Part shown: positions 571 to 64,000 of the stretch, one piece after another | How the letters are laid out: each line of letters opens with the position of its first letter | Position numbering within the stretch: position 1 is the stretch's first letter | IMG/VR virus record: IMGVR_UViG_3300029893_000001 | Coordinates: 328,329 to 392,328 of that record | DNA: 64,000 nt | Direction: 5' to 3' (one strand) | Notes under the pieces: generated by a model | Database searches by the model: none | Told to the model about the DNA's origin: nothing | Seen by the model: only the letters and a program-made list of their open reading frames with translations | Program-made: the position numbers and the translations under genes

Positions 571-1470
571 TTAGCTCCAGACAAAATCAGTCGAAGACCG
601 GGGGTTCCATCTTTTCACCGGAGTACACAACTGCCGGCTAATTTCCTGTAGATACGTCCTGCCGTATTTTCCGTCTTCTAAGGACTTTTCCAGATGGCGC
701 GTGGAGTCATCTCGAAAGATTTCTCTCGACGCCATCCCGGCTCCGTAAGCGAGGGCAGCCACAGTGTCGGTGTCTCCGCAAAATCCAACACTCCTGACTA
801 GGAGTGCCATCGGATCGTTAGAGGATCTTATCGCAGTTGCAGCGGCTTTGACGCAGGGAATTCCGTCAGAAGGACAGAATCCATTCCAATCGTTTCCCCA
901 CTCATACCCAGGCACGTAAGCGTCGAGGTATTCATGGAGATCTTTCTTTGGTCCTAAGCCATACCAGAAGTAGTGGTACATCAGGGCTGCGGCTGCAGCA
1001 CTGTCCCTCCCCTCCTTGGTATTGTGTGTAACTGACGCCTGCAGATGCGAAAACCAAATCACCTTTTCTGGTGTGTCATAGACTCCTGCAGGCAACGCTC
1101 GCATCGCAGCCCCAGAACGACGGCTATCTGATTTGATTCTTGCGAGGAAATCCTGCGTGTCGGCGACTGTCTTCAAGAACTCGAAGAAGTGCTTAGCGTA
1201 TGTTTCTCGCGGGTCTCTCTTGAAAATCCGAAGGAAGTTTTCCGCAATCTTCTCTTGTGAGAGACCGTATGGGCTGTGTCGATGCTGCAGTACAAGCTCC
1301 GCGATCGCGATCGACATCTGTGTGTCGTCCGTGTACTCACCAGGACCGTGGGGCCCCAATGCATGAGCGAAGAATGTTTCGCCCGTGTTGTTCTCTTCCA
1401 CAAACATACGGGGCCGGAATTCAAATCCGGCCCCGTATGCGTCCCCTACTGCAATATCAACGAGAAGCAT
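571..1470 (-). CDS. ADP-ribosylglycohydrolase (DraG/ARH family)
   Basis: Motifs GDAYG, YTDDTQM, GAAMR, VTH and GDTDT in the canonical order. Confidence 0.92.
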   Translation of the reverse strand: MLLVDIAVGDAYGAGFEFRPRMFVEENNTGETFFAHALGPHGPGEYTDDTQMSIAIAELVLQHRHSPYGLSQEKIAENFLRIFKRDPRETYAKHFFEFLKTVADTQDFLARIKSDSRRSGAAMRALPAGVYDTPEKVIWFSHLQASVTHNTKEGRDSAAAAALMYHYFWYGLGPKKDLHEYLDAYVPGYEWGNDWNGFCPSDGIPCVKAAATAIRSSNDPMALLVRSVGFCGDTDTVAALAYGAGMASREIFRDDSTRHLEKSLEDGKYGRTYLQEISRQLCTPVKRWNPRSSTDFVWS

Positions 1471-10662: not shown

Positions 10663-10897
10663 TTTGCTTCTCCTTGGTGGTCTTCTTGGTCCACTCAAAA
10701 ATGAGATTGACTCCCCTACTGAGGTATACCGCCTCTCCCTCGTCAAACCCCGGAGGGATCACTACGTAGGCTCGTAGTTCTGATTCCTTTGGAATCGAGA
10801 CTCCACGTTCCGAGAGAAGTTGAGCAATCTGCTCGGTTGATAGCGACACCTTACCCTTTTCGGTTTCGGTAGTCTCGATTTGGACGCTCAGTTTCAT
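10655..10897 (-). CDS. Small hypothetical protein translationally coupled to the kinase
   Basis: ATGA overlap with the kinase stop at 10894-10897. Confidence 0.55.
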   Translation of the reverse strand: MKLSVQIETTETEKGKVSLSTEQIAQLLSERGVSIPKESELRAYVVIPPGFDEGEAVYLSRGVNLIFEWTKKTTKEKQNG

Positions 10898-11922
10898 GCC
10901 GTGAAACCCGGAATTGGCTTGAGGTTTGATTGATGACGGCCGAACGAATCGACCCTCATTTGATGAAACGTCTCGATCAGATTCTCTTTCGACCAGTTTG
11001 GTCGAGAGAGGGGGTCTCTTACAATCAAACGCTTCACGAACTTGCACATGGGATCTGGAGTCGACGCTGGAACCTTGAGAGCTGACACCCCGTCGTAACT
11101 ACCGGTGAGACAATACAACATGGTCTTACCCAGGCTGTACAAGTCTGTCTCCGGAATTGGAGGCTTCCCGTCCACCATCTCCGGGGCCGAAAATAATTCG
11201 GTGTATCCCTTGGCTGCCGTCTTCCCGGTAGGACGAATGGCTGCCAGTCCGAAATCGACCAACACGGCGAGATGCTTGTGTGGCTGCACGATGACGTTCT
11301 TCGGCTTCAAATCTCCGTGCACGACGCCGTGTTGGTGAAGGTATAACAGTCCGTTCAAGAGACGCTGGGTGATCCATGCCACATTCTCTGGGTCCAAGCG
11401 TCCAGCCTTGTCAACGACCTCCTCCAGCGTTGGACCCTCAACATAGGACATGACGAGGATGATGCTCCCATCATCATGGCGAATGACATCCCTCATGGCA
11501 GGCAGTGCGTAGTGCCTCATGTCCCAAAGCGCACGAGCCTCGTCCATGAGGATAGCCTCTGATTCTGGGCCTGTCATGAAGCCCTGCTTAAGGCAGGCCG
11601 GATGCTTGAGGATGAGGTGCTCAGCTTTGTATGTAGCGCCAAAGCCGCCCTCTGCGATCTTCTCGACAACACGATAGTTGCCAATAATCGTGCCTTTCTT
11701 CGCGAGCTTCTCGAAGCGGGCGCGCTTTTGGGCGCTTACAAGGATACTGTGAGCCTCATTGATTTCCTTGGCCATGGTGTCGTCACCCCCTGACCGATCA
11801 GGATGGTACTTCACCAGCAAGGCCTTCTTGGCAGCGTCAAGAACTTCTCGCGACGCATTCACGGAGACCTGAAGGATGTCGGCCAACTCACGGAGAGTCT
11901 CCGCCTTTTCAACCAAACCCAT
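10894..11922 (-). CDS. J-domain (DnaJ) fused to a Hanks-type Ser/Thr protein kinase
   Basis: KYHPDR J-domain motif; kinase GGFG loop, HGDLKPKN, DFG, APE and DLYSLG. Confidence 0.92.
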   Translation of the reverse strand: MGLVEKAETLRELADILQVSVNASREVLDAAKKALLVKYHPDRSGGDDTMAKEINEAHSILVSAQKRARFEKLAKKGTIIGNYRVVEKIAEGGFGATYKAEHLILKHPACLKQGFMTGPESEAILMDEARALWDMRHYALPAMRDVIRHDDGSIILVMSYVEGPTLEEVVDKAGRLDPENVAWITQRLLNGLLYLHQHGVVHGDLKPKNVIVQPHKHLAVLVDFGLAAIRPTGKTAAKGYTELFSAPEMVDGKPPIPETDLYSLGKTMLYCLTGSYDGVSALKVPASTPDPMCKFVKRLIVRDPLSRPNWSKENLIETFHQMRVDSFGRHQSNLKPIPGFTA

Positions 11923-30134: not shown

Positions 30135-30968
30135 TCAGGTTGATTCTGGTTTTCGCCGTTGTGCAGTCCTGACACGGTGGCAGCAGGCACAGACCAGTTC
30201 ACACTTTTGGAGTTCAGCCTTGAGAGCCTTGAGCCGACCTTGGCTAGCTAGGTCAGAAATCGAATACTGCTTCTCATACTCGGGTAGGTGATCGAAGTCC
30301 ATGGCCTCCGGCGGGAACTCCCACCCACAATCGGTGCATGGATTCGCCTTGAGCTTATCCAGAAGCCTCCTGCACTTTCGAACTTTACGTTGGCGTCGAA
30401 CCTTCGAGCACTCCTTGCAGGTACGGATTTGATCGAGTCGAATCGTAAGTGTGAATTCCCTTGTGGGCTTTACTTCACCACAGTATTGACACTCACGAAG
30501 TTCTTCAGGGTCAAATCCTTTCTCCCATTCTTCAAGCTGAGATTTCCTCTGACAGAGCTTACAGTGAACAACTGCGTCCTCAAGTAGTTTCCGAAAGCTA
30601 CGAACCGAACGTTCTAATTTTGCTGTGAGTGGCACGTCCTCTAGCTTGGCTACTAGCTTCTCTTTCGCACCACAAGAGCCGCATCTCATTTTCTTGAGCG
30701 CTGCTTTCAGAAGTTGCTTATTGCGTTCTGCGTACTTGGCGTAATAAGCGGCCCGTTCTTCTGGTGCCTTCGGTACGTACGTTGACTTCTCTTCACGTGC
30801 CGCCAACAGTCGCCGACGTTCATTGACACGCTCACGATTTTCTTTGGCCCACTTCCGCGCTTTCGCCTTGCAGCATTCCTTGCAATAGCTTTGAGGCCTC
30901 TCGTTATACACGTAGAAATCGTTGAGAGGTAAGACAGCCTCACACGCGCGGCATTGCTTTGTAGACAC
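30135..30968 (-). CDS. HNH endonuclease with N-terminal Cys repeats (probable homing endonuclease)
   Basis: CTDCG...MDFDHL...ELQKCELVCACCHRVRT; N-terminal CRAC..F..YCKEC repeats. Confidence 0.8.
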   Translation of the reverse strand: MSTKQCRACEAVLPLNDFYVYNERPQSYCKECCKAKARKWAKENRERVNERRRLLAAREEKSTYVPKAPEERAAYYAKYAERNKQLLKAALKKMRCGSCGAKEKLVAKLEDVPLTAKLERSVRSFRKLLEDAVVHCKLCQRKSQLEEWEKGFDPEELRECQYCGEVKPTREFTLTIRLDQIRTCKECSKVRRQRKVRKCRRLLDKLKANPCTDCGWEFPPEAMDFDHLPEYEKQYSISDLASQGRLKALKAELQKCELVCACCHRVRTAQRRKPEST

Positions 30969-31400
30969 TAGTTTCTTCCGAGAAAGACCCTAGTACCTAT
31001 TTACAGACCCTAGCCGTCTTTTTTTTTTCTAAACTGGGAAAGGGTTTTCCGGGACCTGGGATTTCAACTTCGCTTGTCCCAGACGAAGCGATGCTCAGTC
31101 GTCTTCCACAAGCTTCCACAAGGACTCGATCGGTTTACGTTCTCCCAACGTGCAGCGATATCTCTCACCTCCCGTGCACGTGAATTCTACGTACGGTGTG
31201 TACGAGCCCCACTGCCCCACGGTCCAGCCAACCGAGTGAATCGTTTCGACCGTCACCTCTAGCTCGCCCACCTTGTACGTCTCGCCTACCTCAAGCATGC
31301 GTCAGTCTCCTACTCTCCCCGCCCCGAGCGTCGCACGAACCCACTCCCGAACTCAAGCAGTTTCTAGGAACTCAGTCCCCTACTACCCAGTTTACCGGGT

Positions 31401-31577
31401 GCCCCAAAATCCATTTTGGATTTTGGGGCGTGAAAAACCCCCGGAGGGTTTTTCACTGGTTTTTGCAAAGCAAAAACCAACGCATTTTGCCGGGTAGGCA
31501 AAATGCGAGGCCCATTTTGCTCCGGGCAAAATGGGCGGGAGGCCGTTCGCTGGATTTTCCCCGGAGGAAAATCCAGC
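31401..31577. repeat. Tandem array of six perfect palindromes (10-13 bp arms with A/T tracts)
   Basis: 31401-31429, 31430-31456, 31457-31479, 31481-31507, 31510-31536 and 31549-31577, each checked base by base. Confidence 0.95.
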
Positions 31578-31588
31578 CCTTAACGGCC

Positions 31589-31620
31589 GACTGGCCCGGG
31601 GCTTTTGCCCCGGGCCGGTC
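31589..31620 (-). terminator. GC-rich hairpin after the lipoprotein gene, followed by GGCCGTTAA
   Basis: GACTGGCCCGGGGC-TTTT-GCCCCGGGCCGGTC. Confidence 0.7.
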
Positions 31621-31876
31621 AGTGGCAGGACACCCAGAATCCGGGCCGGACCATGACGGCCCGATTGACCCGGCGGGTGACGTGCGCCCCGTACCGATTG
31701 CACGCGGCCTGCGTTTCGGCGAGGAGCGCATCCCCGCTCGACGCTTCCGAGCGGGGCGTCGAGGAATACTCGACGCGGGCCGGCGTCGTCGCGCCGCAGC
31801 CCGAGGCGAGCAGCACGATGCAGACGAGCAGGAGCGAGAAGAGGCCAGCGCCGAGAGCCTTGATTTCGTCCATCAT
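31619..31876 (-). CDS. Putative small lipoprotein
   Basis: Hydrophobic signal ending in lipobox-like LASGC; GGAGG RBS and promoter motif 31902-31917. Confidence 0.65.
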   Translation of the reverse strand: MMDEIKALGAGLFSLLLVCIVLLASGCGATTPARVEYSSTPRSEASSGDALLAETQAACNRYGAHVTRRVNRAVMVRPGFWVSCH

Positions 31877-31981
31877 TATTCGGTCCTCCCTTGTGCCGAC
31901 TAGTATCGGGTGGGTTCGCTCCTCTTAAATGGAGAAGCCCCCGGGCATCCGCCCGGGGGCTATTCCCTTGTTGCCCGGAAA

Positions 31982-32452
31982 TCAGCCGGGCAACAAATCG
32001 TTCAGCTCGTCGAGGAAATCGTCGACCTCCCCGTCCGAAGCCTCCGCGGGATCCGGGGTCGGCTCGGGAGCCGGAGCGGGGGCCGGCGCCGCCTTCGGAG
32101 TCGCCTTCGGTGCGGCCGGAGGCGCCACCGGAGCCGCTCCGCCGAGGCTCGACAGATCCAGATCGTCGATCCCCAGGGACAGCGCCGGAGCGCTGGCCGG
32201 CGGAGGGGTGGGCGCAGCCTTCGGAGCCTCGGGAGCCTTCGCGGCGCCCTTGCCCTTGCCCTTCGGACAGCCCCGGGCGTTGTGCCCCTGCTCGCCGCAG
32301 GTGCCGCAGGTGTAGGTCGGGGCCGGAGCCGCCATCACCGCCGCCGTGGCCAGCGTCGAGATGGGAACGACCGCGAAGCCCATCGCGCTCAGCGCCCGCA
32401 CCACCTTGCCGAACTGCTCGTCGGTCATCTTGTCGGTCATCTTCTTGCTCAT
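31982..32452 (-). CDS. CCHC zinc-knuckle protein with a Pro/Ala linker and acidic C-terminal tail
   Basis: CGTCGEQGHNARGC is C-x2-C-x4-H-x4-C; own promoter (32497-32512) and hairpin (31925-31961). Confidence 0.8.
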   Translation of the reverse strand: MSKKMTDKMTDEQFGKVVRALSAMGFAVVPISTLATAAVMAAPAPTYTCGTCGEQGHNARGCPKGKGKGAAKAPEAPKAAPTPPPASAPALSLGIDDLDLSSLGGAAPVAPPAAPKATPKAAPAPAPAPEPTPDPAEASDGEVDDFLDELNDLLPG

Positions 32453-32722
32453 GATCATGATTCCTTTCCGGCGAGGCGTCCCTCGCCTCATTTCCTAGTA
32501 TCGAATGGGTTCGTTTGGCCGACTAGCGCCGCTGACGCTCCGCGTGACGCCGCGCCAACTCGGCGCGGGCCTCCTCGATCGCTAGAATCTCGTCCACGTC
32601 CAAACCGTCGTACATGGGGCAAAAACCTCCGTTCGCCGTCTAATATCGGCCGGGTTCGCCCAATTGACATTTCGAGAGTAGCTTAAACGGGCTTTGGCCC
32701 GGGTTTCCCCGGGCCGCCCGCC

Positions 32723-33139
32723 TCACGCCGCCTTCGTACGGGCGGCCAGCTTGGCGGCGACCGCCTTGCTGTACGCCGCCGCCTTCTCGTAGACCGCCGC
32801 CGCCAGGTGCAGATCGAGCCGGCCGATGCTCGACCCGAGGCACACGTGGCCCTCGGAGGGCACCCCGAGCACCAGCTTGTTCCCCTGGCCGCAGATCCAC
32901 CGCTGGAGACGCTGCCGGTTGCCGCTCGACGCCTTGGCCACGAAGACGTCGTGGACCGCGATGCGCGCCGGGCCCGGCGTCCCGTCCTCGCCGTGCATCG
33001 AGCGGAGCACGATGCCGAAGGACTTCACGCCCTCCCCGGCGGAGCCGACCTGCGCGCCGGTCGCGGCGTCCAGGTGGAAGACCAGGGCGGGGGCCAGCGG
33101 GAGATCGCGGGTGACGTCGTACGTGTTCTTCTTCGCCAT
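32723..33139 (-). CDS. Hypothetical early protein
   Basis: Own promoter (33187-33202), RBS and downstream hairpin-TTTAA; strong GC3 bias. Confidence 0.75.
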   Translation of the reverse strand: MAKKNTYDVTRDLPLAPALVFHLDAATGAQVGSAGEGVKSFGIVLRSMHGEDGTPGPARIAVHDVFVAKASSGNRQRLQRWICGQGNKLVLGVPSEGHVCLGSSIGRLDLHLAAAVYEKAAAYSKAVAAKLAARTKAA

Positions 33140-33210
33140 GATTCACCATTCTTTCTGGGGCGCCGTGCCCCGTCGTTGTACCGACTAGTATTGTCAGGGT
33201 TCGGAAAACT

Positions 33211-33344
33211 TGGCGGAGTCACATCGATGCATGGGTGGAGCCCGTGTCTCTGTGCAAGTGACTCGCTCCCGACGAGTATGTCCCTACGTGCAGCTTGCCG
33301 GTAACGTAGAGGGAGACCGCCGGGCGGCTATCATTCCTCCGCCA
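33211..33344 (-). ncRNA. Candidate small structured RNA
   Basis: Starts just after promoter 33351-33366; 8-bp terminal stem TGGCGGAG/CTCCGCCA plus internal hairpins; only a 16-codon ORF follows the RBS-like sequence. Confidence 0.4.
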
Positions 33345-34241
33345 TTCACTACTATCAGCCGGGTTCAAATCCCTCTTAAACGCGAGAAGGCCCGGGGCTT
33401 TTGCCCCGGGCCCCATCACCCGACCTTCCGAATCGGGGCGACGATGACTCGACTACGCAGCTCGCGCCGCTCTCGGAGCTTGCGGATCTGCAAATCGAGA
33501 AGCGCAATCGTGGCATCGAGCATTTCCCTTTCCTCGGGATCTTGCTCCCTCACACGCTTGCGCAGCGCCTCCGCTTTCTCACAGAGGAGTGCACGAATGA
33601 CATGATCGTTCATTATTCACCTCCCACCAACTACTATCGAGCGGGTTCAATTGCTATTCGGGAGTAGGGTCACGCGGAAATAGGAAAATGCCGACCAATT
33701 AATTTTGACCCATAAGTGGTAAAGTATGTAACCGCTCGTTCACACATTCTCACGCTTAAGTACGTATACGCTCGCAGCCATTGCGAGCTTGCTTGTACCC
33801 ACTGCGAAATAGCCTAATAAGGCATGTACGCTCGCAGCCATTGCGAGCGGGGCGGGGCGTTAAAAGGCTACGGGCCCCAGAGGGGCCCTATCTCCTCGCA
33901 GCCGTTGCGAGAAATGGTCCTAGTAGTCCATCCGTCCGCTCGGAATGGGACCCGAGCCGAGCAGGTAGGCCAGCGCCTCGACCCACGCCGCTCGTCCAGC
34001 GGCCAAGTGAGACCTCAGGACGAAAATGCTTCCCAACGCTCCGACTTGCAGATCGAGAGCAAGTCGAGCCTGGTGCTCGTGGTAGCGTGCCGAGCCGACC
34101 GCTAGAGCAGCACGAGCACACTGATCACCGAAATCTTTCTCCGTGGCCATCGTTGCCTCCTCGCCGATTATTATCAGCTGGGTTCAATTCGTGCGCGGTT
34201 AAATGCGTAACGGCTGCGAGGAATCTCGCAGCCGCTGCAAA

Positions 34242-34767: not shown

Positions 34768-34892
34768 GATTATTCCTCCTGGGCCGGAGCCCGTTGCCCC
34801 GACTAGTATCGGCCGGGTTCGGCCGACTAGGGAATTAAACGCGCAACGGCTGCGAGATTTCTCGCAGCCGTTGCTTGTGTAGAGTCAGTGGG

Positions 34893-42830: not shown

Positions 42831-42877
42831 GGCTGTGGGATTCATTAAACGCGAAGAGGGGCCCGAAGGCCCCTCTT

Positions 42878-43432
42878 CTATGCGTCCACCATCGCCCGAC
42901 GGCTCCAGTAGAGGATTGCCTTGGCGAAATCCTCCGCCGAATAGGTGGCCGGCGTTCCTCCGGGGAGACCCAGGAAGTTGCGGGCCATCGCCATCGGAGT
43001 CTGGGGCTCCGGCTCCTCGGTGGGGCGGGCGTTGATCGAGACGATCTCCCACTCGCATTCCGTCGAGGCGTCGTTGCCGAGAACGTCGTGCCTGTAGAGC
43101 ACGATCTCGACGACCTTCGCGGGAGCCTTCTCGCCCTTCGCACGCACCTCGATGTAGGGCTCCTCGCCCTCTCGCCGCGCCGAGAACGTCGCCCGGAGCG
43201 TCGTCTTCGGAGTGACCTCGATGACGCCACACTTGAAGTAGTGCGCCTGACTCTCGGTCATCGGGATGAGCAGAACGCCGTCGCGGTAGCCCGGCTTCGC
43301 CTCGGAGAACTGCTGCTCGACGAAAGCGATGAGCACATCCCACTTCGCATCGTGGGTGGCGATGAAGTGTGAGAAGGGGCTCTCCGGCGTCTGGCGACGC
43401 ACGAAGTCATTGATTCCGATGAGGTTACCCAT
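42878..43432 (-). CDS. DUF3228-like protein
   Basis: FVRRQ..., Y/FxARRxxExP, IVLYRHDVL, WEIVSI, EPQTPMAMARNFLG..GG..Y...ILYWS pattern; promoter 43466-43481. Confidence 0.7.
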   Translation of the reverse strand: MGNLIGINDFVRRQTPESPFSHFIATHDAKWDVLIAFVEQQFSEAKPGYRDGVLLIPMTESQAHYFKCGVIEVTPKTTLRATFSARREGEEPYIEVRAKGEKAPAKVVEIVLYRHDVLGNDASTECEWEIVSINARPTEEPEPQTPMAMARNFLGLPGGTPATYSAEDFAKAILYWSRRAMVDA

Positions 43433-47900: not shown

Positions 47901-50900
47901 GTTCAGCCCTTTATTAGTATTAGTCTTCGGGCCCGGACACTAAATGGGTTCTAAGGGCCTCCGGAGTTTCAGCCTCAGGCGACCAGCGGTCTTCTATCCA
48001 GTATCCTTCCTGGTGTCGACGACCGTTTATCCAAAGGTTGTAGTGGTCGTTTTGGATGTCACAGTGGCAGGTGTGAGCCGTCGAACGCAATATGCGTAGC
48101 GGATACGGCCCTTCCATCTCGAAGCGATCGGATATCACATCATACAGCCAGCGAGCCCTGACCGCCGTCTTCGGTGGCTCTCCTTTAAGGATCTCCCTTG
48201 GATGTTCAAACCGTCCGCTGAGCCATGCAACAGCTATTGCGTTGAATATTTGTTGCTTGCTGCTCAGATCAATTTCGTTGCTGGACAAGTCTGTGCTCCC
48301 TTAGAAGTCTATGTCGAAGAACTCGGTAGGCTCACTCTCCGAGAGGACAAGATCGTCGTCCCGATAGGTTTCTGAAACGTGGTCTCCCTGAGGAAGGGGC
48401 GTATTGGTGTCGTCATAAACGCACCAATCTCCCTCGCCGAGCCCTCGAATGTAGAGAATCCCAGCCCCAATTAGGACCACTTGCTGCGAAGCAAGTTCGC
48501 CTACTTCAAACTGGATGTGATCGATCTCCGCATCATCCGTTTTGTGTCGCACGCTATAGCGCATATTTGCTTGGCCCCTTAAACGAGAAAGGGCCCTTAC
48601 GGGCCCTCTCTCAGTCGTCTGTCTCGATCTCGAACTTGACTCCTCCGGATTCCATCACGAGAGTCTTCGCCCGGGCCTTCGCCCGGCCTTCCTGCCACTC
48701 CTTCTCGTAGGGGAACTCCGAGGAATCCACCCACTCTCCGGCCGCGAGGCGCTGGCAGATTGCTTCGCACTCGTTCCAGTGACAGGCGTCGTCGGCGAGC
48801 ACGGCGACTCGTGTCAGGTGTCCGACCTGCGTAGCGAACAGCACGGAAATCGGATGCAGATGCACCCAATCCGATCCCCGCTGCGGCTTCGAGACGTCCA
48901 TGATGTCTTCGCGGTGGGCCTCCTTCCACAGGAGATCCATGACCTTCGAGTAGCTGCGGAGAACCGCCCTCAGATTGCAGGCACTCTGGGCGTCGAGCGC
49001 CAACTGTGCTGCCCGCTGGATCTCCTCCTGATGGAGGATTTCCTCTTCGGTGGTGCGGCCCTTCGCGATGTCGATTTCCTTTTGGCTGACCATGATTTTC
49101 CCTGTTGGTTGATTAGTAGTCGTAGTCGAGTTCGTAGTCGTACCCGTAGTCGTCGTACCCATCCAATTCGTCTTGACGATCCAACTCCCACTCGGAATCC
49201 CAATCCGTGTAGTCGTAGCTGTCCGTCAACGACTCCTGGTAAAGGTACCAATTCTTCTCCTCGTCGTGGTCGACGAAGAAATCCTCGTAGGGAAGAATCG
49301 GCCCCAGAGAATATTCGTGCAGGCCCTCGGCAAGGGCAGCGGACTCAGAAAGCTCTGGACGTCGCATTGATTCCTCACGATTGGATTGTCATTGCCTGCT
49401 GTCTAATATCCCCAGGGTTCGACACGCCGAAGGGCCCCGGATGGGCCGCCTCGGTTAAAAGGCCTTGGCGTCAGGAGTCGCGGACCACGACTTCGTACTC
49501 CAGCTGCGGGGAATACGGGACGTCTTCCCATTCGGGAGGAATGTCTCCGAGCTTCTTGGCCAGTTCGCTTCGCGTATCAGGCTTGCGTCGCTGTAGCCGG
49601 ACGAGTGCTCGACCCTCGCCAATCCGCTTCATGGAAATACCTTCCATCCACAGGACCGCGCGAATCTGAGCAGGAAGATCTTCGTGAGTTGCCTGGAACT
49701 TATAGAAGATCGTAGTCCAGTGCTTCTCCATGATTCGCTTCATCTCTTCTTGGACGCTCAGAGATGGAGCCGTGTCGAGCAGACGAACCATCAGCCGATA
49801 TTCGCTCGACTTGCAAATCGAAACTTCCTCGATAACCGGCTGAATCCGGGTCATCGAGATGTAGTTCTGGAGATAGACGTCCCTGTAGTTTTGGGCGTCC
49901 CTTTCGGTCTGAAACAGGAGAGCCCCGCCTCCCTCCCCGTACAGGACCCGATTCTCCAACGTCTTCGATAGCTCCGTCAGCGGATGGCACAGAGCGAACA
50001 TCTTATAGCTTTCCATCACTGCCCCTCGGTCAGTAGAAGAACATTAGGTACACGTAGACGACCCCCGCCGCTACTATTGCAACGGGGGCGAAATAGTTGT
50101 CGAAGATGTACCAGAATCTCTCCATCAGACCTTCTGAAGAGTGTTCCTGAAGTCGTTGAACTTCGTGTCGGGGATTCGTCGCTTCACAATCTCCTTTCCG
50201 CTGGAGTCGAGAACGTGCAGTTCGACGACCCCATCGGAATTCCTTGCGAAGATTACGCTTTCGCCGGCCACGCCGAAGGTCATTTCGGCTGCGACAGTCT
50301 TCTTGTGTTCGTGGATCGAGACTTCGTCGTCCATGGTTCCTCCTCATTAAACGCGATTAGGGGAGCTTTGGCTCCCCTAATCTCTATTCATCGATGCTGA
50401 GGGCCTCTTCCATTTCGTCGTCCGACGAATAGCCGAGGAGCGTCTGCATGCCATCGACAGCCCACCGGAGATATTCGATCTCACCGTAGGAGTCGCCCTT
50501 CTCCAGGTCGGAGAAATCTTCCCCATAGATGTCACCGAGGTCAGCGGCGAGCCTATCGATGGCCTCTTGAGCCTCCTCGGAGAGGCCGGTGCCATCACTC
50601 ACCACACTGTGAAGGTGGAGGAGCGCGCTCCGAATCTCGACGACGGTGTTTTTCTCGTGGGCCATTATTCGCTCCTTCTGCGGCGATGACGCCGCCATCT
50701 ATACTATCGTCGGGGTTCGTGCTTGATTAAAGCGAGAATGGCGCCCTTGAGGGCGCCCCTCTCACGATCCGATTCCGAACCCGTAGTCCTCGCCGCCCCA
50801 CGTATTGTAGGGCCGAGTCATGAATCCGTTCGGATGCCTACGCTGCGGGAACAGCACCCTGACGACGTACCCGCGAGGATCTCCATCGAAGCGGACACGA

Positions 50901-57006: not shown

Positions 57007-58013
57007 GATTAGTCCTGCCTCGTCTACAGTGCATCCACCTTGACACGTGCTGCGTAGAGAGCCACCGAAGCCTCCTCCAGCTTTTCAGCAGCAGGCTCAG
57101 TGACTTCCTTCTTCCAATTGGTTTCCCTAAGTCTACGAAGAAGATTGTTGATCTCGTCGTTGATAGCGACTAGCTCTTGGCGGTCGTGGTCCATATTAGT
57201 TCTTCTCCTCCCCGAGTGAAACGAACTCGTTTACGTATGCCTTGCGGTACACTTCCTTGACTTCCGAATCCATGATCGAAGCGTAACTCTCCGACTCACC
57301 AAGGCGCTCTTCGGCCTCAGCCTCGTCGAGAACGGCCTCCGGGTCACCATCGAGGATTGCTTCGACTTCCGTTCTTGCATCGGCCCGAGCATTCTTCTCG
57401 ACGTGTCTAAGAAACTGCTTGAATAGAGGAGTCATAGTTCCTCGTAGTGCCACTCGCGATCAGCGTGAACGTCTTGCTTGTTGAGCTTGCGGTTCCAGTA
57501 CTCCAGGAGAGGTGCAATCTTCTGGCTCGGCATTAGGAAGACAGAGCTTACTCCGCTTTGTCCGGAAACCTTTTCCGTCCATCGGTACTTGACTTCCTTG
57601 ATGAAAACGTCAGATCGGTCTCGCGAGTAATGAATGCCGGCTTCGTAGTATTGAGTGGTCATTTCGGTCTCCTACATGTCTCCCCAAAACCAATCCTTCC
57701 CGCAGTCTGGGCAACTAGTTGCCATCGGGCCGGCTGGAGTAGAGTGCTTGCATTTATTTCGAAGAGACACGTACTCCTTTTGTAGTACGCGAAGCTCCTC
57801 TTCGAGCTTATGACGTTTGTCGTCTAGCTCTTTTCTCTTTGATCTGATTTCTTCAGGAGACATGGTAGAGTCCAGGTTAAATGCGAAAGGGGGCGGGCCA
57901 CCGGCCCGCCCCCTTTCAGAGGAGTCTAGCTGCTGCGAGCAGCACACCGGAGGCAATTGCGAGGAGGGCGACGACTTGCGCCATTCGCAGCAGTAGAACC
58001 TCGTCGTTCATGA

Positions 58014-63865: not shown

Positions 63866-64000
63866 TCTGCCCTCCCGGCGCCAGCCGTTGCTACTATTTA
63901 CTATCGGCTGGGTTCGCTACTCGCTCACGTGCGATGCGATCCAACCAGGACTGGTTCTCTGGAGAGTCGATCCGGGACACAACCTTTTCGACCCACTGCT

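What the first reader, a model, noticed from the sequence alone, without database searches (positions are those of the whole stretch)
31401..31588. Six back-to-back perfect A/T-tract palindromes at the boundary of the early region
Seen: six different perfect palindromes of 23-29 bp, the first five abutting with 0-2 nt gaps. Each arm carries a T4-5/A4-5 tract, and three share a CCGGA/TCCGG loop. Because the arm sequences differ but every one is perfectly symmetric, selection appears to act on the symmetry rather than on a tandem duplication. The array lies where promoter density drops from about 36 copies in 33 kb to 6 copies in 31 kb. Established: T5 has a palindrome- and repeat-rich injection-stop signal at the end of its first-step-transfer DNA, and hairpin clusters also mark origins and packaging sites. 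Inference: an injection-stop, terminal-repeat boundary, origin or cruciform/protein-binding array.
Basis: partly seen in the sequence, partly recalled or inferred. Interest (0 to 1): 0.78.

Follow-up and report, generated by a model that had tools for sequence, protein, structure and literature searches.

The report
Hairpin stack ending a promoter-dense phage region
A giant phage from subsurface metagenomes carries a unique 236-base block of eight back-to-back hairpins, six of them perfect and all different, exactly where its densely promoted block of small genes ends; it most likely acts as a two-way transcription stop, but its unusual build leaves a DNA-level role open.

Summary
Six perfect palindromes (31401-31577) sit with a seventh GC-rich hairpin (31589-31620) and a weak eighth (31385-31400). 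Together they form the most structured 180-nt stretch, and the densest A/T-tract cluster, of a jumbo-phage record of at least 392 kb. The block lies in the 320-nt gap between two minus-strand genes. Upstream on that strand, a promoter-like motif (TGAACCCTGcCGATAnTAg) occurs 32 times in 32 kb. Downstream it occurs 6 times in 31 kb. GC content falls from about 70% to about 50% at the same point.

I found no support for a T5-type injection stop, a genome end, an origin or a packaging site. Most of those tests were weak, and no diverged relative covering this region or RNA data exist.

My best reading (about 0.4) is a compound two-way terminator or insulator. H4 on the sense strand and H2 on the antisense strand are each followed by the T-tract arm of the central hairpin H3. 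These are the best hairpin-plus-U-tail signals measured in the phage.

H1-H6 are nevertheless unlike the phage's 21 canonical terminators. They have AT-rich centres with GC clamps, loops of 3 or 5 nt, and no G·U pairs. A DNA hairpin or cruciform role (about 0.25) therefore remains open.

The parts
31385..31400 (-). H0: weak 6-bp hairpin (ACCCGG uaaa CUGGGU on the minus strand, one G·U pair)
   Evidence: Fold (-7.3 kcal/mol on the minus strand, -4.3 on the plus strand).
31401..31429 (.). H1: perfect palindrome GCCCCAAAATCCA ttt TGGATTTTGGGGC (13-bp stem, 3-nt loop, A-tract in the 5' arm)
31430..31456 (.). H2: perfect palindrome GTGAAAAACCC ccgga GGGTTTTTCAC (11/5, A-tract in the 5' arm)
31457..31479 (.). 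H3: central palindrome TGGTTTTTGC aaa GCAAAAACCA (10/3). Its 5' arm supplies a U-tract in either transcription direction.
31481..31507 (.). H4: perfect palindrome CGCATTTTGCC gggta GGCAAAATGCG (11/5)
31510..31536 (.). H5: perfect palindrome GCCCATTTTGC tccgg GCAAAATGGGC (11/5)
31541..31588 (.). H6 (31549-31577, GCTGGATTTTCC ccgga GGAAAATCCAGC, 12/5) plus a 7-bp outer helix GGCCGTT/AACGGCC
   Evidence: -30 kcal/mol with the outer helix.
31589..31620 (-). H7: GC-rich 14-bp hairpin with a 4-nt loop that overlaps the TGA stop of the 85-aa gene. Its 24-bp core is an exact copy of the canonical terminator at 33389-33412, but its tail is degenerate (GGCCGTTAAGG).
31466..31507 (-). Sense-direction intrinsic-terminator signal: H4 followed by UUGGUUUUUGCUUUG
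   Evidence: Flagged. U-tail score is 2.94, against a median of 1.47 for the phage's canonical terminators.
31430..31471 (+). Antisense-direction intrinsic-terminator signal: H2 followed by UGGUUUUUGCAAAGC
   Evidence: Flagged. U-tail score is 2.09.
31619..31876 (-). Upstream gene: 85 aa, with a signal peptide and a lipobox-like LLASGC. It is the last cassette of the promoter-dense region.
   Evidence: translation. Called as a gene in three independent annotations.
31901..31917 (-). Last promoter-like motif of the dense series (GAACCCACCCGATACTA)
31095..31298 (-). Downstream gene: a 67-aa ORFan with a strong SD. No consensus promoter motif lies between the array and this gene.
   Evidence: no position-weight score above 0 in 31250-31700.
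30135..30968 (-). 277-aa HNH endonuclease, second gene downstream of the array
   Evidence: phrog_2255 at 1.2e-31, with endonuclease VII families hitting the N-terminal part. Weak match to PDB 4h9d.

Best explanation
The block is a compound, two-way transcription stop (an insulator). It closes the promoter-dense, GC-rich region of small gene cassettes.

Nearly all genes are read on the minus strand. RNA polymerase leaving the last cassette, the 85-aa gene, transcribes H7, then H6 and H5. It then meets H4, which is followed directly by UUGGUUUUUGCUUUG, the T-tract arm of H3. That is a canonical hairpin-plus-U-tract release signal. Polymerase coming the other way meets the mirror arrangement, H2 followed by the same H3 arm.

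Because the hairpins abut by 0-2 nt, the U-tract that follows one hairpin is the 5' arm of the next. A polymerase that reads through folds that U-tract away and meets the next signal. The remaining hairpins would serve as pause sites, back-ups and 3'-end protection.

Shown: the structures, their position, the U-tail scores and the promoter-motif step. Inferred: that the motif is a promoter, that RNA actually ends here, and that the downstream 67-aa/HNH/HTH genes use another promoter or regulated read-through.
For: Position: the block fills the gap between two co-oriented genes, directly after the last of 32 closely spaced promoter-like motifs and at a sharp GC step.

Terminator signals: H4(-) and H2(+) are picked up by the terminator scan. 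Their U-tail scores, 2.94 and 2.09, are the highest and among the highest of the hairpin tails scored (two canonical sites reach 2.43-2.67). The median for the 23 scored CRTTTAA-site hairpins is 1.47, and 21 of those are stable.

Context: H7 copies a canonical terminator but has lost the usual U-rich tail, so extra stop signals make sense here. The phage routinely uses long perfect palindromes as terminators: 49 perfect hairpins, and 22 of 23 intergenic CRTTTAA sites are preceded by one. It has a sigma-70-family gene, and no T7-type RNA polymerase was found, though that search's positive control also found nothing, so this is uninformative. Host-type termination rules therefore probably apply.

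Fit to the anatomy: perfect symmetry fits a signal that must fold when read from either strand. The 0-2-nt abutment is explained by sharing of U-tracts between neighbouring hairpins.
Against: H1-H6 are a different class from the phage's own terminators. None of the 6 has a 4-nt loop, against 17 of 21 canonical terminators (Fisher p = 7e-4). They have AT-rich centres with GC clamps outside, the reverse of the canonical design, and they lack the CUUUC-GC-GUUUAAG tail.

Only one hairpin per direction has a good U-tail. H1, H3, H5 and H6 do not.

The array has 68 pairs with no G·U. Canonical terminators have 13 G·U among 282 pairs, plus bulges. RNA-only selection would tolerate G·U.

There is almost no plus-strand transcription known to need stopping.

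The downstream 2.7-kb gene set has no recognisable promoter of its own, which is awkward if the stop is tight. No RNA data exist.
Confidence: 0.38

Rival explanations
1. DNA-level structural element. The palindromes act as DNA hairpins or cruciforms, extruded by supercoiling or formed on single strands. They would mark or operate a genome landmark such as a replication or priming site, a terminal-repeat or ejection-pause boundary, a recombination junction between modules, or a target for a structure-specific protein.
For: All 68 pairs are Watson-Crick, whereas canonical RNA terminators here carry G·U pairs and bulges. The design is 'inside-out': AT-rich centres, which favour melting and nucleation (established for cruciform extrusion; my own knowledge), with GC clamps at the base. 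All loops are odd in length (3 or 5 nt). The block is by far the densest A/T-tract cluster in the genome. DNA-parameter hairpins are stable, at -9 to -14 kcal/mol. It sits exactly at a compositional junction in a region with strain-level indels. An HNH endonuclease gene lies two genes downstream; its N-terminal part also matches families annotated endonuclease VII at E 4e-7 to 6.5e-5.
Against: There is no repeated protein-binding motif or iteron and no DnaA-box enrichment. GC skew shows no inflection. The replication genes are about 175 kb away and the terminase 85 kb away. Contigs cross the block in every sample. Contig depths give no hint of doubled coverage on the dense side (a weak measure). 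Palindromes of 23-29 bp are near the lower size limit for extrusion in vivo. The HNH gene is probably a mobile homing gene.
Confidence: 0.25
2. Post-transcriptional RNA element. The hairpin block forms the 3' UTR of the early mRNA, or a 3'-derived small RNA. It would protect upstream messages from 3' exonucleases, separate the upstream and downstream cistrons by processing, or sequester an RNA-binding protein.
For: On the sense strand, 236 nt fold into eight consecutive hairpins with almost no linker (z = -9.7). The block starts inside the stop codon of the upstream gene. H6 with its outer helix is a 19-bp bulged stem. A CX2CX4HX4C zinc-knuckle protein is encoded two genes upstream (a lead only).
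Against: No Rfam family reaches threshold. The phage encodes no RNase III. The loops share no consistent motif. One hairpin would be enough for 3' protection. The absence of G·U pairs argues against purely RNA-level selection.
Confidence: 0.17
3. Non-adaptive by-product. In a hyperplastic region built from promoter-ORF-terminator cassettes, decayed cassette junctions were turned into perfect palindromes by intramolecular template switching. The block has no dedicated function.
For: The region is a patchwork of repeated terminator and promoter modules. There are exact 24-bp hairpin copies at 31593 and 33389, and a CGGCTGCGAG hairpin family at 34211, 34843 and 35472. Strain-level indels are flanked by repeats. 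Template switching is known to perfect quasi-palindromes (my own knowledge).
Against: Six abutting perfect palindromes with one shared architecture, found nowhere else in at least 392 kb, are hard to obtain without selection. T-tract-first hairpins cannot derive from the A-tract-first canonical terminators.
Confidence: 0.12

Closest known systems
Intrinsic (factor-independent) bidirectional and tandem terminators of bacteria and phages, such as the early terminator TE of T7 at the end of its class I genes (my own knowledge)
   Same: An RNA hairpin followed by a U-tract. An A-tract/T-tract symmetry that lets one site work in both directions. A position at the end of an early, heavily promoted gene block.
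   Different: There are eight hairpins rather than one or two. Only one per direction has a proper U-tail. The stems are AT-rich in the centre. U-tracts are shared with the neighbouring hairpin.
This phage's own canonical terminators (GC-rich perfect stem, 4-nt loop, CUUUC-GC-GUUUAAG tail)
   Same: Perfect palindromes at gene 3' ends. H7 is an exact copy of one of them.
   Different: H1-H6 have 3- or 5-nt loops, A/T tracts inside the stem with GC outside, no conserved tail, and weaker stems (-11 to -21 against a median of -24 kcal/mol).
T5 injection-stop (iss) region (10.1101/866236)
   Same: A non-coding, palindrome-rich locus at the edge of a block of early genes.
   Different: The T5 locus is about 1.6 kb, lies in a 10-kb terminal repeat, has direct repeats, 131-bp inverted repeats and paired DnaA boxes, and is conserved across relatives. 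None of these is seen here.
REP/BIME clusters of enterobacteria (my own knowledge)
   Same: Clusters of extragenic palindromes at operon 3' ends, linked to mRNA stability, attenuation and gyrase binding.
   Different: REPs are a dispersed multi-copy family with a consensus sequence and a RAYT transposase. These hairpins are single-copy and all different, and no Y1 transposase is encoded.
Mimiviridae 'hairpin rule' transcript ends (PMC4402537)
   Same: Signals defined by palindromic structure, not sequence. My pattern search found arrays of 6-8 distinct perfect A/T-tract palindromes between genes in giant-virus fragments (L202 3098-3377, L211 4841-5043).
   Different: That is a eukaryotic-virus system with its own RNA polymerase, an RNase III and polyadenylation. 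This phage has no RNase III and no evolutionary link to it.

Membership tests
Canonical intrinsic terminator | A stable hairpin directly followed by a U-rich tract | tested here: met
   Met for H4 on the minus strand and H2 on the plus strand only. Not met for H1, H3, H5, H6 or H7, whose U-tail scores are 0.01-0.95.
This phage's canonical terminator class | GC-rich centre, 4-nt loop, and a CUUUC-(GC)-GUUUAAG tail | tested here: not met
   None of the 6 has a tetraloop, against 17 of 21 canonical terminators (p = 7e-4). There is no CRTTTAA tail. Only H7 matches, and its tail is degenerate.
T5-type injection-stop signal | Paired DnaA boxes | tested here: not met
   The window has 5 one-mismatch matches against 8.2 expected. 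None lies within 1 kb of the array.
T5-type injection-stop signal | A large non-coding region with direct repeats and long inverted repeats | tested here: not met
   The gap is 320 nt. Only short two-copy direct repeats are present, and there are no long inverted repeats.
T5-type injection-stop signal | Location inside or at the edge of a long terminal direct repeat; two-step DNA transfer | not testable with these tools
   Only assembled contigs were available. The record's ends are assembly breaks.
Replication origin | A strand-skew inflection, iterons or initiator boxes, and proximity to replication genes | tested here: not met
   There is no skew inflection (weak, since skew tracks gene strand). 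There are no iterons. Pol A lies at 184-187 kb and the array at 359.8 kb.
Packaging (pac/cos) site | Adjacency to terminase genes; genome termini | tested here: not met
   TerL is at 274.1-276.1 kb and the portal gene at 277.0-279.3 kb. Contigs run through the array.
REP/BIME | A dispersed multi-copy palindrome family with a RAYT (Y1) transposase | tested here: not met
   H1-H6 are single-copy in the genome. PF01797 is absent.
Any curated RNA family (Rfam 15) | A covariance-model score at or above the gathering threshold | tested here: not met
   The best local hit is RNAI at 27.3 bits against a threshold of 47.
Cruciform-forming or structure-specific protein-binding DNA | Extrusion under native supercoiling; binding or cleavage by a protein | not testable with these tools
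   Only DNA hairpin energies could be computed: -9 to -14 kcal/mol for H1-H6 and -18.4 for H7.

The most novel reading that the evidence does not exclude
The block is a DNA-level landmark defined only by structure. It would be a row of easily melted palindromes with AT-rich centres and GC clamps that form hairpins or cruciforms. These would physically mark the junction between a hyperplastic early region and the core genome, for example as an ejection pause, a terminal-repeat boundary, a priming site or a recombination site. This would be a class of cis element in which symmetry, not sequence, is what is selected.
Probability: 0.2. Interest if true: 0.75.

Novelty: new variant of a known kind. 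Interest (0 to 1): 0.5.

Why it matters
If it is a terminator wall, it shows a compact design principle: overlapping tandem terminators in which each U-tract doubles as the next stem, working in both directions. That would be useful as a strong, short, non-repetitive insulator for synthetic biology. It also marks how a huge phage fences off its fast-evolving block of small early genes.

If instead the DNA structure is what matters, it would be a rare case of a phage cis element selected purely for symmetry. It would then give a handle on how giant phages organise DNA entry, replication or module exchange, which is essentially unknown for uncultured jumbo phages.

Tried and rejected
Relatives:
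- blastn of the locus against 50,697 phage records found nothing.
- The 277-aa and 85-aa neighbours found no relatives in IMG/VR.
- The 67-aa and 320-aa neighbours are ORFans among 5.8 billion proteins.
- TerL-based relatives at 71-85% identity are fragments that stop about 36 kb short of the syntenic place and hold no such arrays.
- The nearest cultured phages (PaBG, NCTB) share only about 32% TerL identity.
- Every contig that carries the locus is the same phage with an identical array, so no covariation test was possible.

Other searches and checks:
- A promoter 14-mer scan of IMG/VR gave only single chance hits.
- A hairpin-pattern scan found analogous arrays only in giant eukaryotic-virus fragments.
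- RNA data: the three metatranscriptomes of the same study hold none of the sampled words, and one of them laid on the locus gave nothing.
- Read-level terminus or coverage analysis was not possible because only contigs are kept.
- No Rfam family reached threshold.
- CCGG and CCGGAG are not avoided or enriched genome-wide.
- A-tract spacing is 7-16 bp (and one 27-bp gap) and is not in helical phase, so I rejected static DNA bending.
- There is no sigma-70-like or consensus promoter inside or just downstream of the array.
- Searches for a T7-like RNA polymerase (whose control also found nothing), a Y1 transposase, RNase III and Pfam terminase domains in the genome found nothing.
- I did not run the protein-nucleic acid complex prediction. 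Shuffled controls destroy the hairpins, so neither outcome would have been decisive.

Full report
**What the window is.** The window is the last 64 kb (328329-392328) of a 392,328-bp IMG/VR virus record. The phage comes from subsurface and rock metagenomes.

It encodes a family A DNA polymerase fused to a UDG domain, an SNF2 helicase, a topoisomerase II A subunit, a ribonucleotide reductase and rIIA. It also has a large terminase (274.1-276.1 kb), a portal protein (277.0-279.3 kb) and its own sigma-70-family factor. No T7-type RNA polymerase was found, though that search's control also found nothing. The nearest cultured phages, PaBG and NCTB, share only about 32% terminase identity.

By a crude codon-usage gene call, nearly all of about 600 genes lie on the minus strand, except one structural block at 271-306 kb.

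The record is not the whole genome. Its end at 392328 is an assembly break at a 77-bp repeat. Other contigs, including a 403,515-bp JGI contig and a 19-kb contig from the same sample, continue for at least 16 kb.

**The observation.** The six palindromes are exactly as described, and each is perfect:

| Hairpin | Coordinates | Stem bp / loop nt |
|---|---|---|
| H1 | 31401-31429 | 13/3 |
| H2 | 31430-31456 | 11/5 |
| H3 | 31457-31479 | 10/3 |
| H4 | 31481-31507 | 11/5 |
| H5 | 31510-31536 | 11/5 |
| H6 | 31549-31577 | 12/5 |

The gaps between them are 0, 0, 1, 2 and 12 nt. The block is larger than reported:
- H6 is extended by a 7-bp outer helix (31541-31547 with 31582-31588).
- A seventh, GC-rich hairpin, H7 (31589-31620), overlaps the stop codon of the upstream gene.
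- A weak eighth hairpin, H0, sits at 31385-31400.

On the sense (minus) strand, 236 nt fold into eight consecutive hairpins with almost no linker (z = -9.7).

**Statistics.** The genome holds 49 perfect hairpins with stems of at least 10 bp, against 2-6 in Markov shuffles. Seven of them lie in these 220 bp. After correcting for GC, the array is the most structured 180-nt window of 6,536, at -7.0 SD. It also holds 13 A4+/T4+ tracts in 180 nt, where the genome mean is 1.0 and the runner-up has 6. The hairpin design with an internal A/T tract and short inner stem occurs nowhere else in the record.

The array is identical in two JGI assemblies, one NCBI MAG, and Logan contigs from three studies. 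It is real DNA, not an artefact.

**Context.** A 17-nt motif, TGAACCCTGcCGATAnTAg, occurs about 70 times, almost always on the minus strand and usually 10-20 nt before a Shine-Dalgarno sequence. That it is a promoter is an inference from its position.

In the window the motif occurs 32 times between 31.9 and 64 kb, and every 0.2-0.9 kb next to the array. It occurs only 6 times between 1 and 31 kb. The extra 16 kb beyond the record's end carries one copy per 2-3 kb.

GC content falls from 62-75% just right of the array to 47-52% left of it.

The array fills the 320-nt gap between two minus-strand genes. Upstream is an 85-aa gene with a lipobox-like motif (31619-31876), which has the last dense-series motif at 31901-31917. 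Downstream is a 67-aa ORFan (31095-31298). After that come a 277-aa HNH endonuclease, small ORFs and an Xre-type HTH gene.

No consensus motif and no sigma-70-like promoter lies between the array and the 67-aa gene.

**The phage's normal terminators.** Twenty-two of 23 intergenic CRTTTAA sites on the minus strand are preceded by a hairpin, and 21 of those are stable. The canonical form has a GC-rich, mostly perfect stem whose outer end is an A-tract/T-tract. Its loop is 4 nt in 17 of 21 cases, often UUCG, GAAA or GUAA on the minus strand. The tail reads CUUUC-(GC)-GUUUAAG. These terminators contain 13 G·U pairs among 282 pairs, plus bulges, so they are selected as minus-strand RNA.

H7 is an exact 24-bp copy of one of them (33389-33412), but its tail is degenerate.

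H1-H6 differ from this class in four ways:
- None has a 4-nt loop (p = 7e-4).
- Their centres are AT-rich and their bases are GC clamps, the reverse of the canonical design.
- They lack the conserved tail.
- All 68 pairs are Watson-Crick. That would be expected in roughly 0.3% of cases at the canonical rate of imperfection (my estimate).

**What speaks for transcription termination.** Because the hairpins abut, the T-tract arm of one serves as the U-tract of its neighbour. On the sense strand, H4 is followed by UUGGUUUUUGCUUUG. On the antisense strand, H2 is followed by UGGUUUUUGCAAAGC. Both U-tracts come from the central hairpin H3.

Both signals are called by the terminator scan. Their U-tail scores, 2.94 and 2.09, are above the canonical median of 1.47. 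Weaker junctions (H5 to H4 on the sense strand; H3 to H4 and H4 to H5 on the antisense strand) add further chances to stop.

This reading explains the abutment, the internal T-tracts, the need for symmetry (function from both directions), the position after the last early cassette, and the weak tail of H7. I therefore favour a compound two-way terminator or insulator, at about 0.38.

**What speaks against it, and for the rivals.** A phage that makes excellent canonical terminators has little obvious reason to stack six unusual ones. Most of the six lack a U-tail. There is little known antisense transcription to stop.

The inside-out design, the strict Watson-Crick symmetry, the odd loop lengths and the extreme A/T-tract density are all features of DNA that melts and folds back easily. 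A DNA hairpin or cruciform role therefore stays plausible, at about 0.25.

Nothing positive points to a particular DNA function, however. GC skew shows no inflection. There are no iterons or DnaA boxes. There is no Y1 transposase. The terminase is 85 kb away and the polymerase about 175 kb away. Contigs cross the array in every sample, and contig depths give no hint of doubled coverage on the dense side (a poor measure).

A purely RNA-level role such as 3' protection, processing or a protein sponge gets about 0.17. No Rfam family reaches threshold and the phage has no RNase III.

A non-adaptive origin by template-switch perfecting of decayed cassette junctions gets about 0.12. The region is a patchwork of repeated promoter and terminator modules with strain-level indels.

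The T5 injection-stop region is a 1.6-kb non-coding stretch inside a 10-kb terminal repeat. It carries many direct repeats, 131-bp inverted repeats and eight paired DnaA boxes, and it is conserved among relatives (10.1101/866236). Every one of these features that could be tested is absent here. The terminal repeat and stepwise entry could not be tested.

**Limits.** No diverged relative carries this region. The flanking genes are ORFans among 5.8 billion proteins. Related IMG/VR contigs end about 36 kb short of the syntenic place. No covariation test was therefore possible. No RNA run holds the locus, and only contigs, not reads, were available.

A pattern search for one of the hairpins found similar rows of 6-8 distinct perfect A/T-tract palindromes, but in giant eukaryotic-virus fragments between capsid genes. 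There, structure-defined hairpins end transcripts (PMC4402537). This is an analogy, not kinship.

**Verdict.** This is a real, unique and statistically extreme structure. It is most economically read as an unusual two-way terminator stack that closes a hyperplastic early region. There is a meaningful chance that the DNA symmetry itself is the functional feature.

Noticed in passing
window 31593-31616 and 33389-33412 (island 31590-33400): An exact 24-bp hairpin (GGCCCGGGGCttttGCCCCGGGCC) occurs at both ends of a 1.8-kb island of 62-75% GC. The island holds three small genes, each with its own promoter-like motif. It looks like an inserted or duplicated cassette block bounded by the same terminator.
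   Followed up: partly
window 31982-32491 (-): A 156-169-aa protein carries a retroviral-type zinc knuckle (CGTCGEQGHNARGC = CX2CX4HX4C) and a Pro/Ala-rich acidic tail. It is encoded two genes upstream of the hairpin block. The nearest ESM Atlas clusters are phage proteins with zf-CCHC families (leads only).
   Followed up: partly
whole record; e.g. window 34843-34874, 42853-42878, 50355-50382, 57885-57917: The phage has a very regular terminator grammar: a perfect GC-rich hairpin with a UUCG, GAAA or GUAA tetraloop on the minus strand, then CUUUC-(GC)-GUUUAAG. Of 23 intergenic CRTTTAA sites, 22 have this form.
   Followed up: yes
whole record; window 31901-31917 and 37 other copies in the window: A 17-nt promoter-like motif, TGAACCCTGcCGATAnTAg, has about 70 copies, nearly all on the minus strand. 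None lies between 185 and 309 kb, the structural and late part of the genome. It does not look like a sigma-70 -35/-10 promoter. The polymerase or sigma factor that reads it is unknown.
   Followed up: partly
genome 272030(+), 321038(+), 332338(+) = window 4010, 268330(-), 258382(-) and others: A second upstream motif, (C/G)TTATCTA, is enriched before genes that lack the first motif, in 12 upstream regions. It may be another promoter class.
   Followed up: no
window 63925-64000 (genome 392252-392328) and loci L143, L148, L144: The record ends at a 77-bp repeat that flanks a 5.6-kb segment (T4-type RNA ligase, metallophosphatase and small ORFs). The segment is present in some samples and absent in others. 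The genome continues for at least 16 kb beyond the record.
   Followed up: yes
window about 27877: The NCBI MAG copy has a 100-bp insertion here relative to this record. Several Logan contigs break at the same point, which suggests a variable repeat.
   Followed up: no
window 33162, 33164, 33166: Three substitutions within 5 nt separate this record from every other assembly of the phage. Otherwise there is essentially no variation over 12 kb.
   Followed up: no
window 10894-11922 (-), 571-1470 (-): The region downstream of the array (on the minus strand) holds accessory genes: a Ser/Thr protein kinase fused to a DnaJ domain, and an ADP-ribosylglycohydrolase.
   Followed up: no
L202 3098-3377 and L211 4841-5043 (IMG/VR giant-virus fragments): Rows of 6-8 different perfect A/T-tract palindromes with 3-nt loops lie between NCLDV major-capsid-protein paralogs. 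They are probably stacked 'hairpin rule' transcript-end signals.
   Followed up: partly
genome 108494-108543 and 109417-109457: Two very long perfect hairpins (24-bp and 19-bp stems) lie in and near a 0.7-kb gene-free gap. This is the second most structured place in the genome.
   Followed up: no
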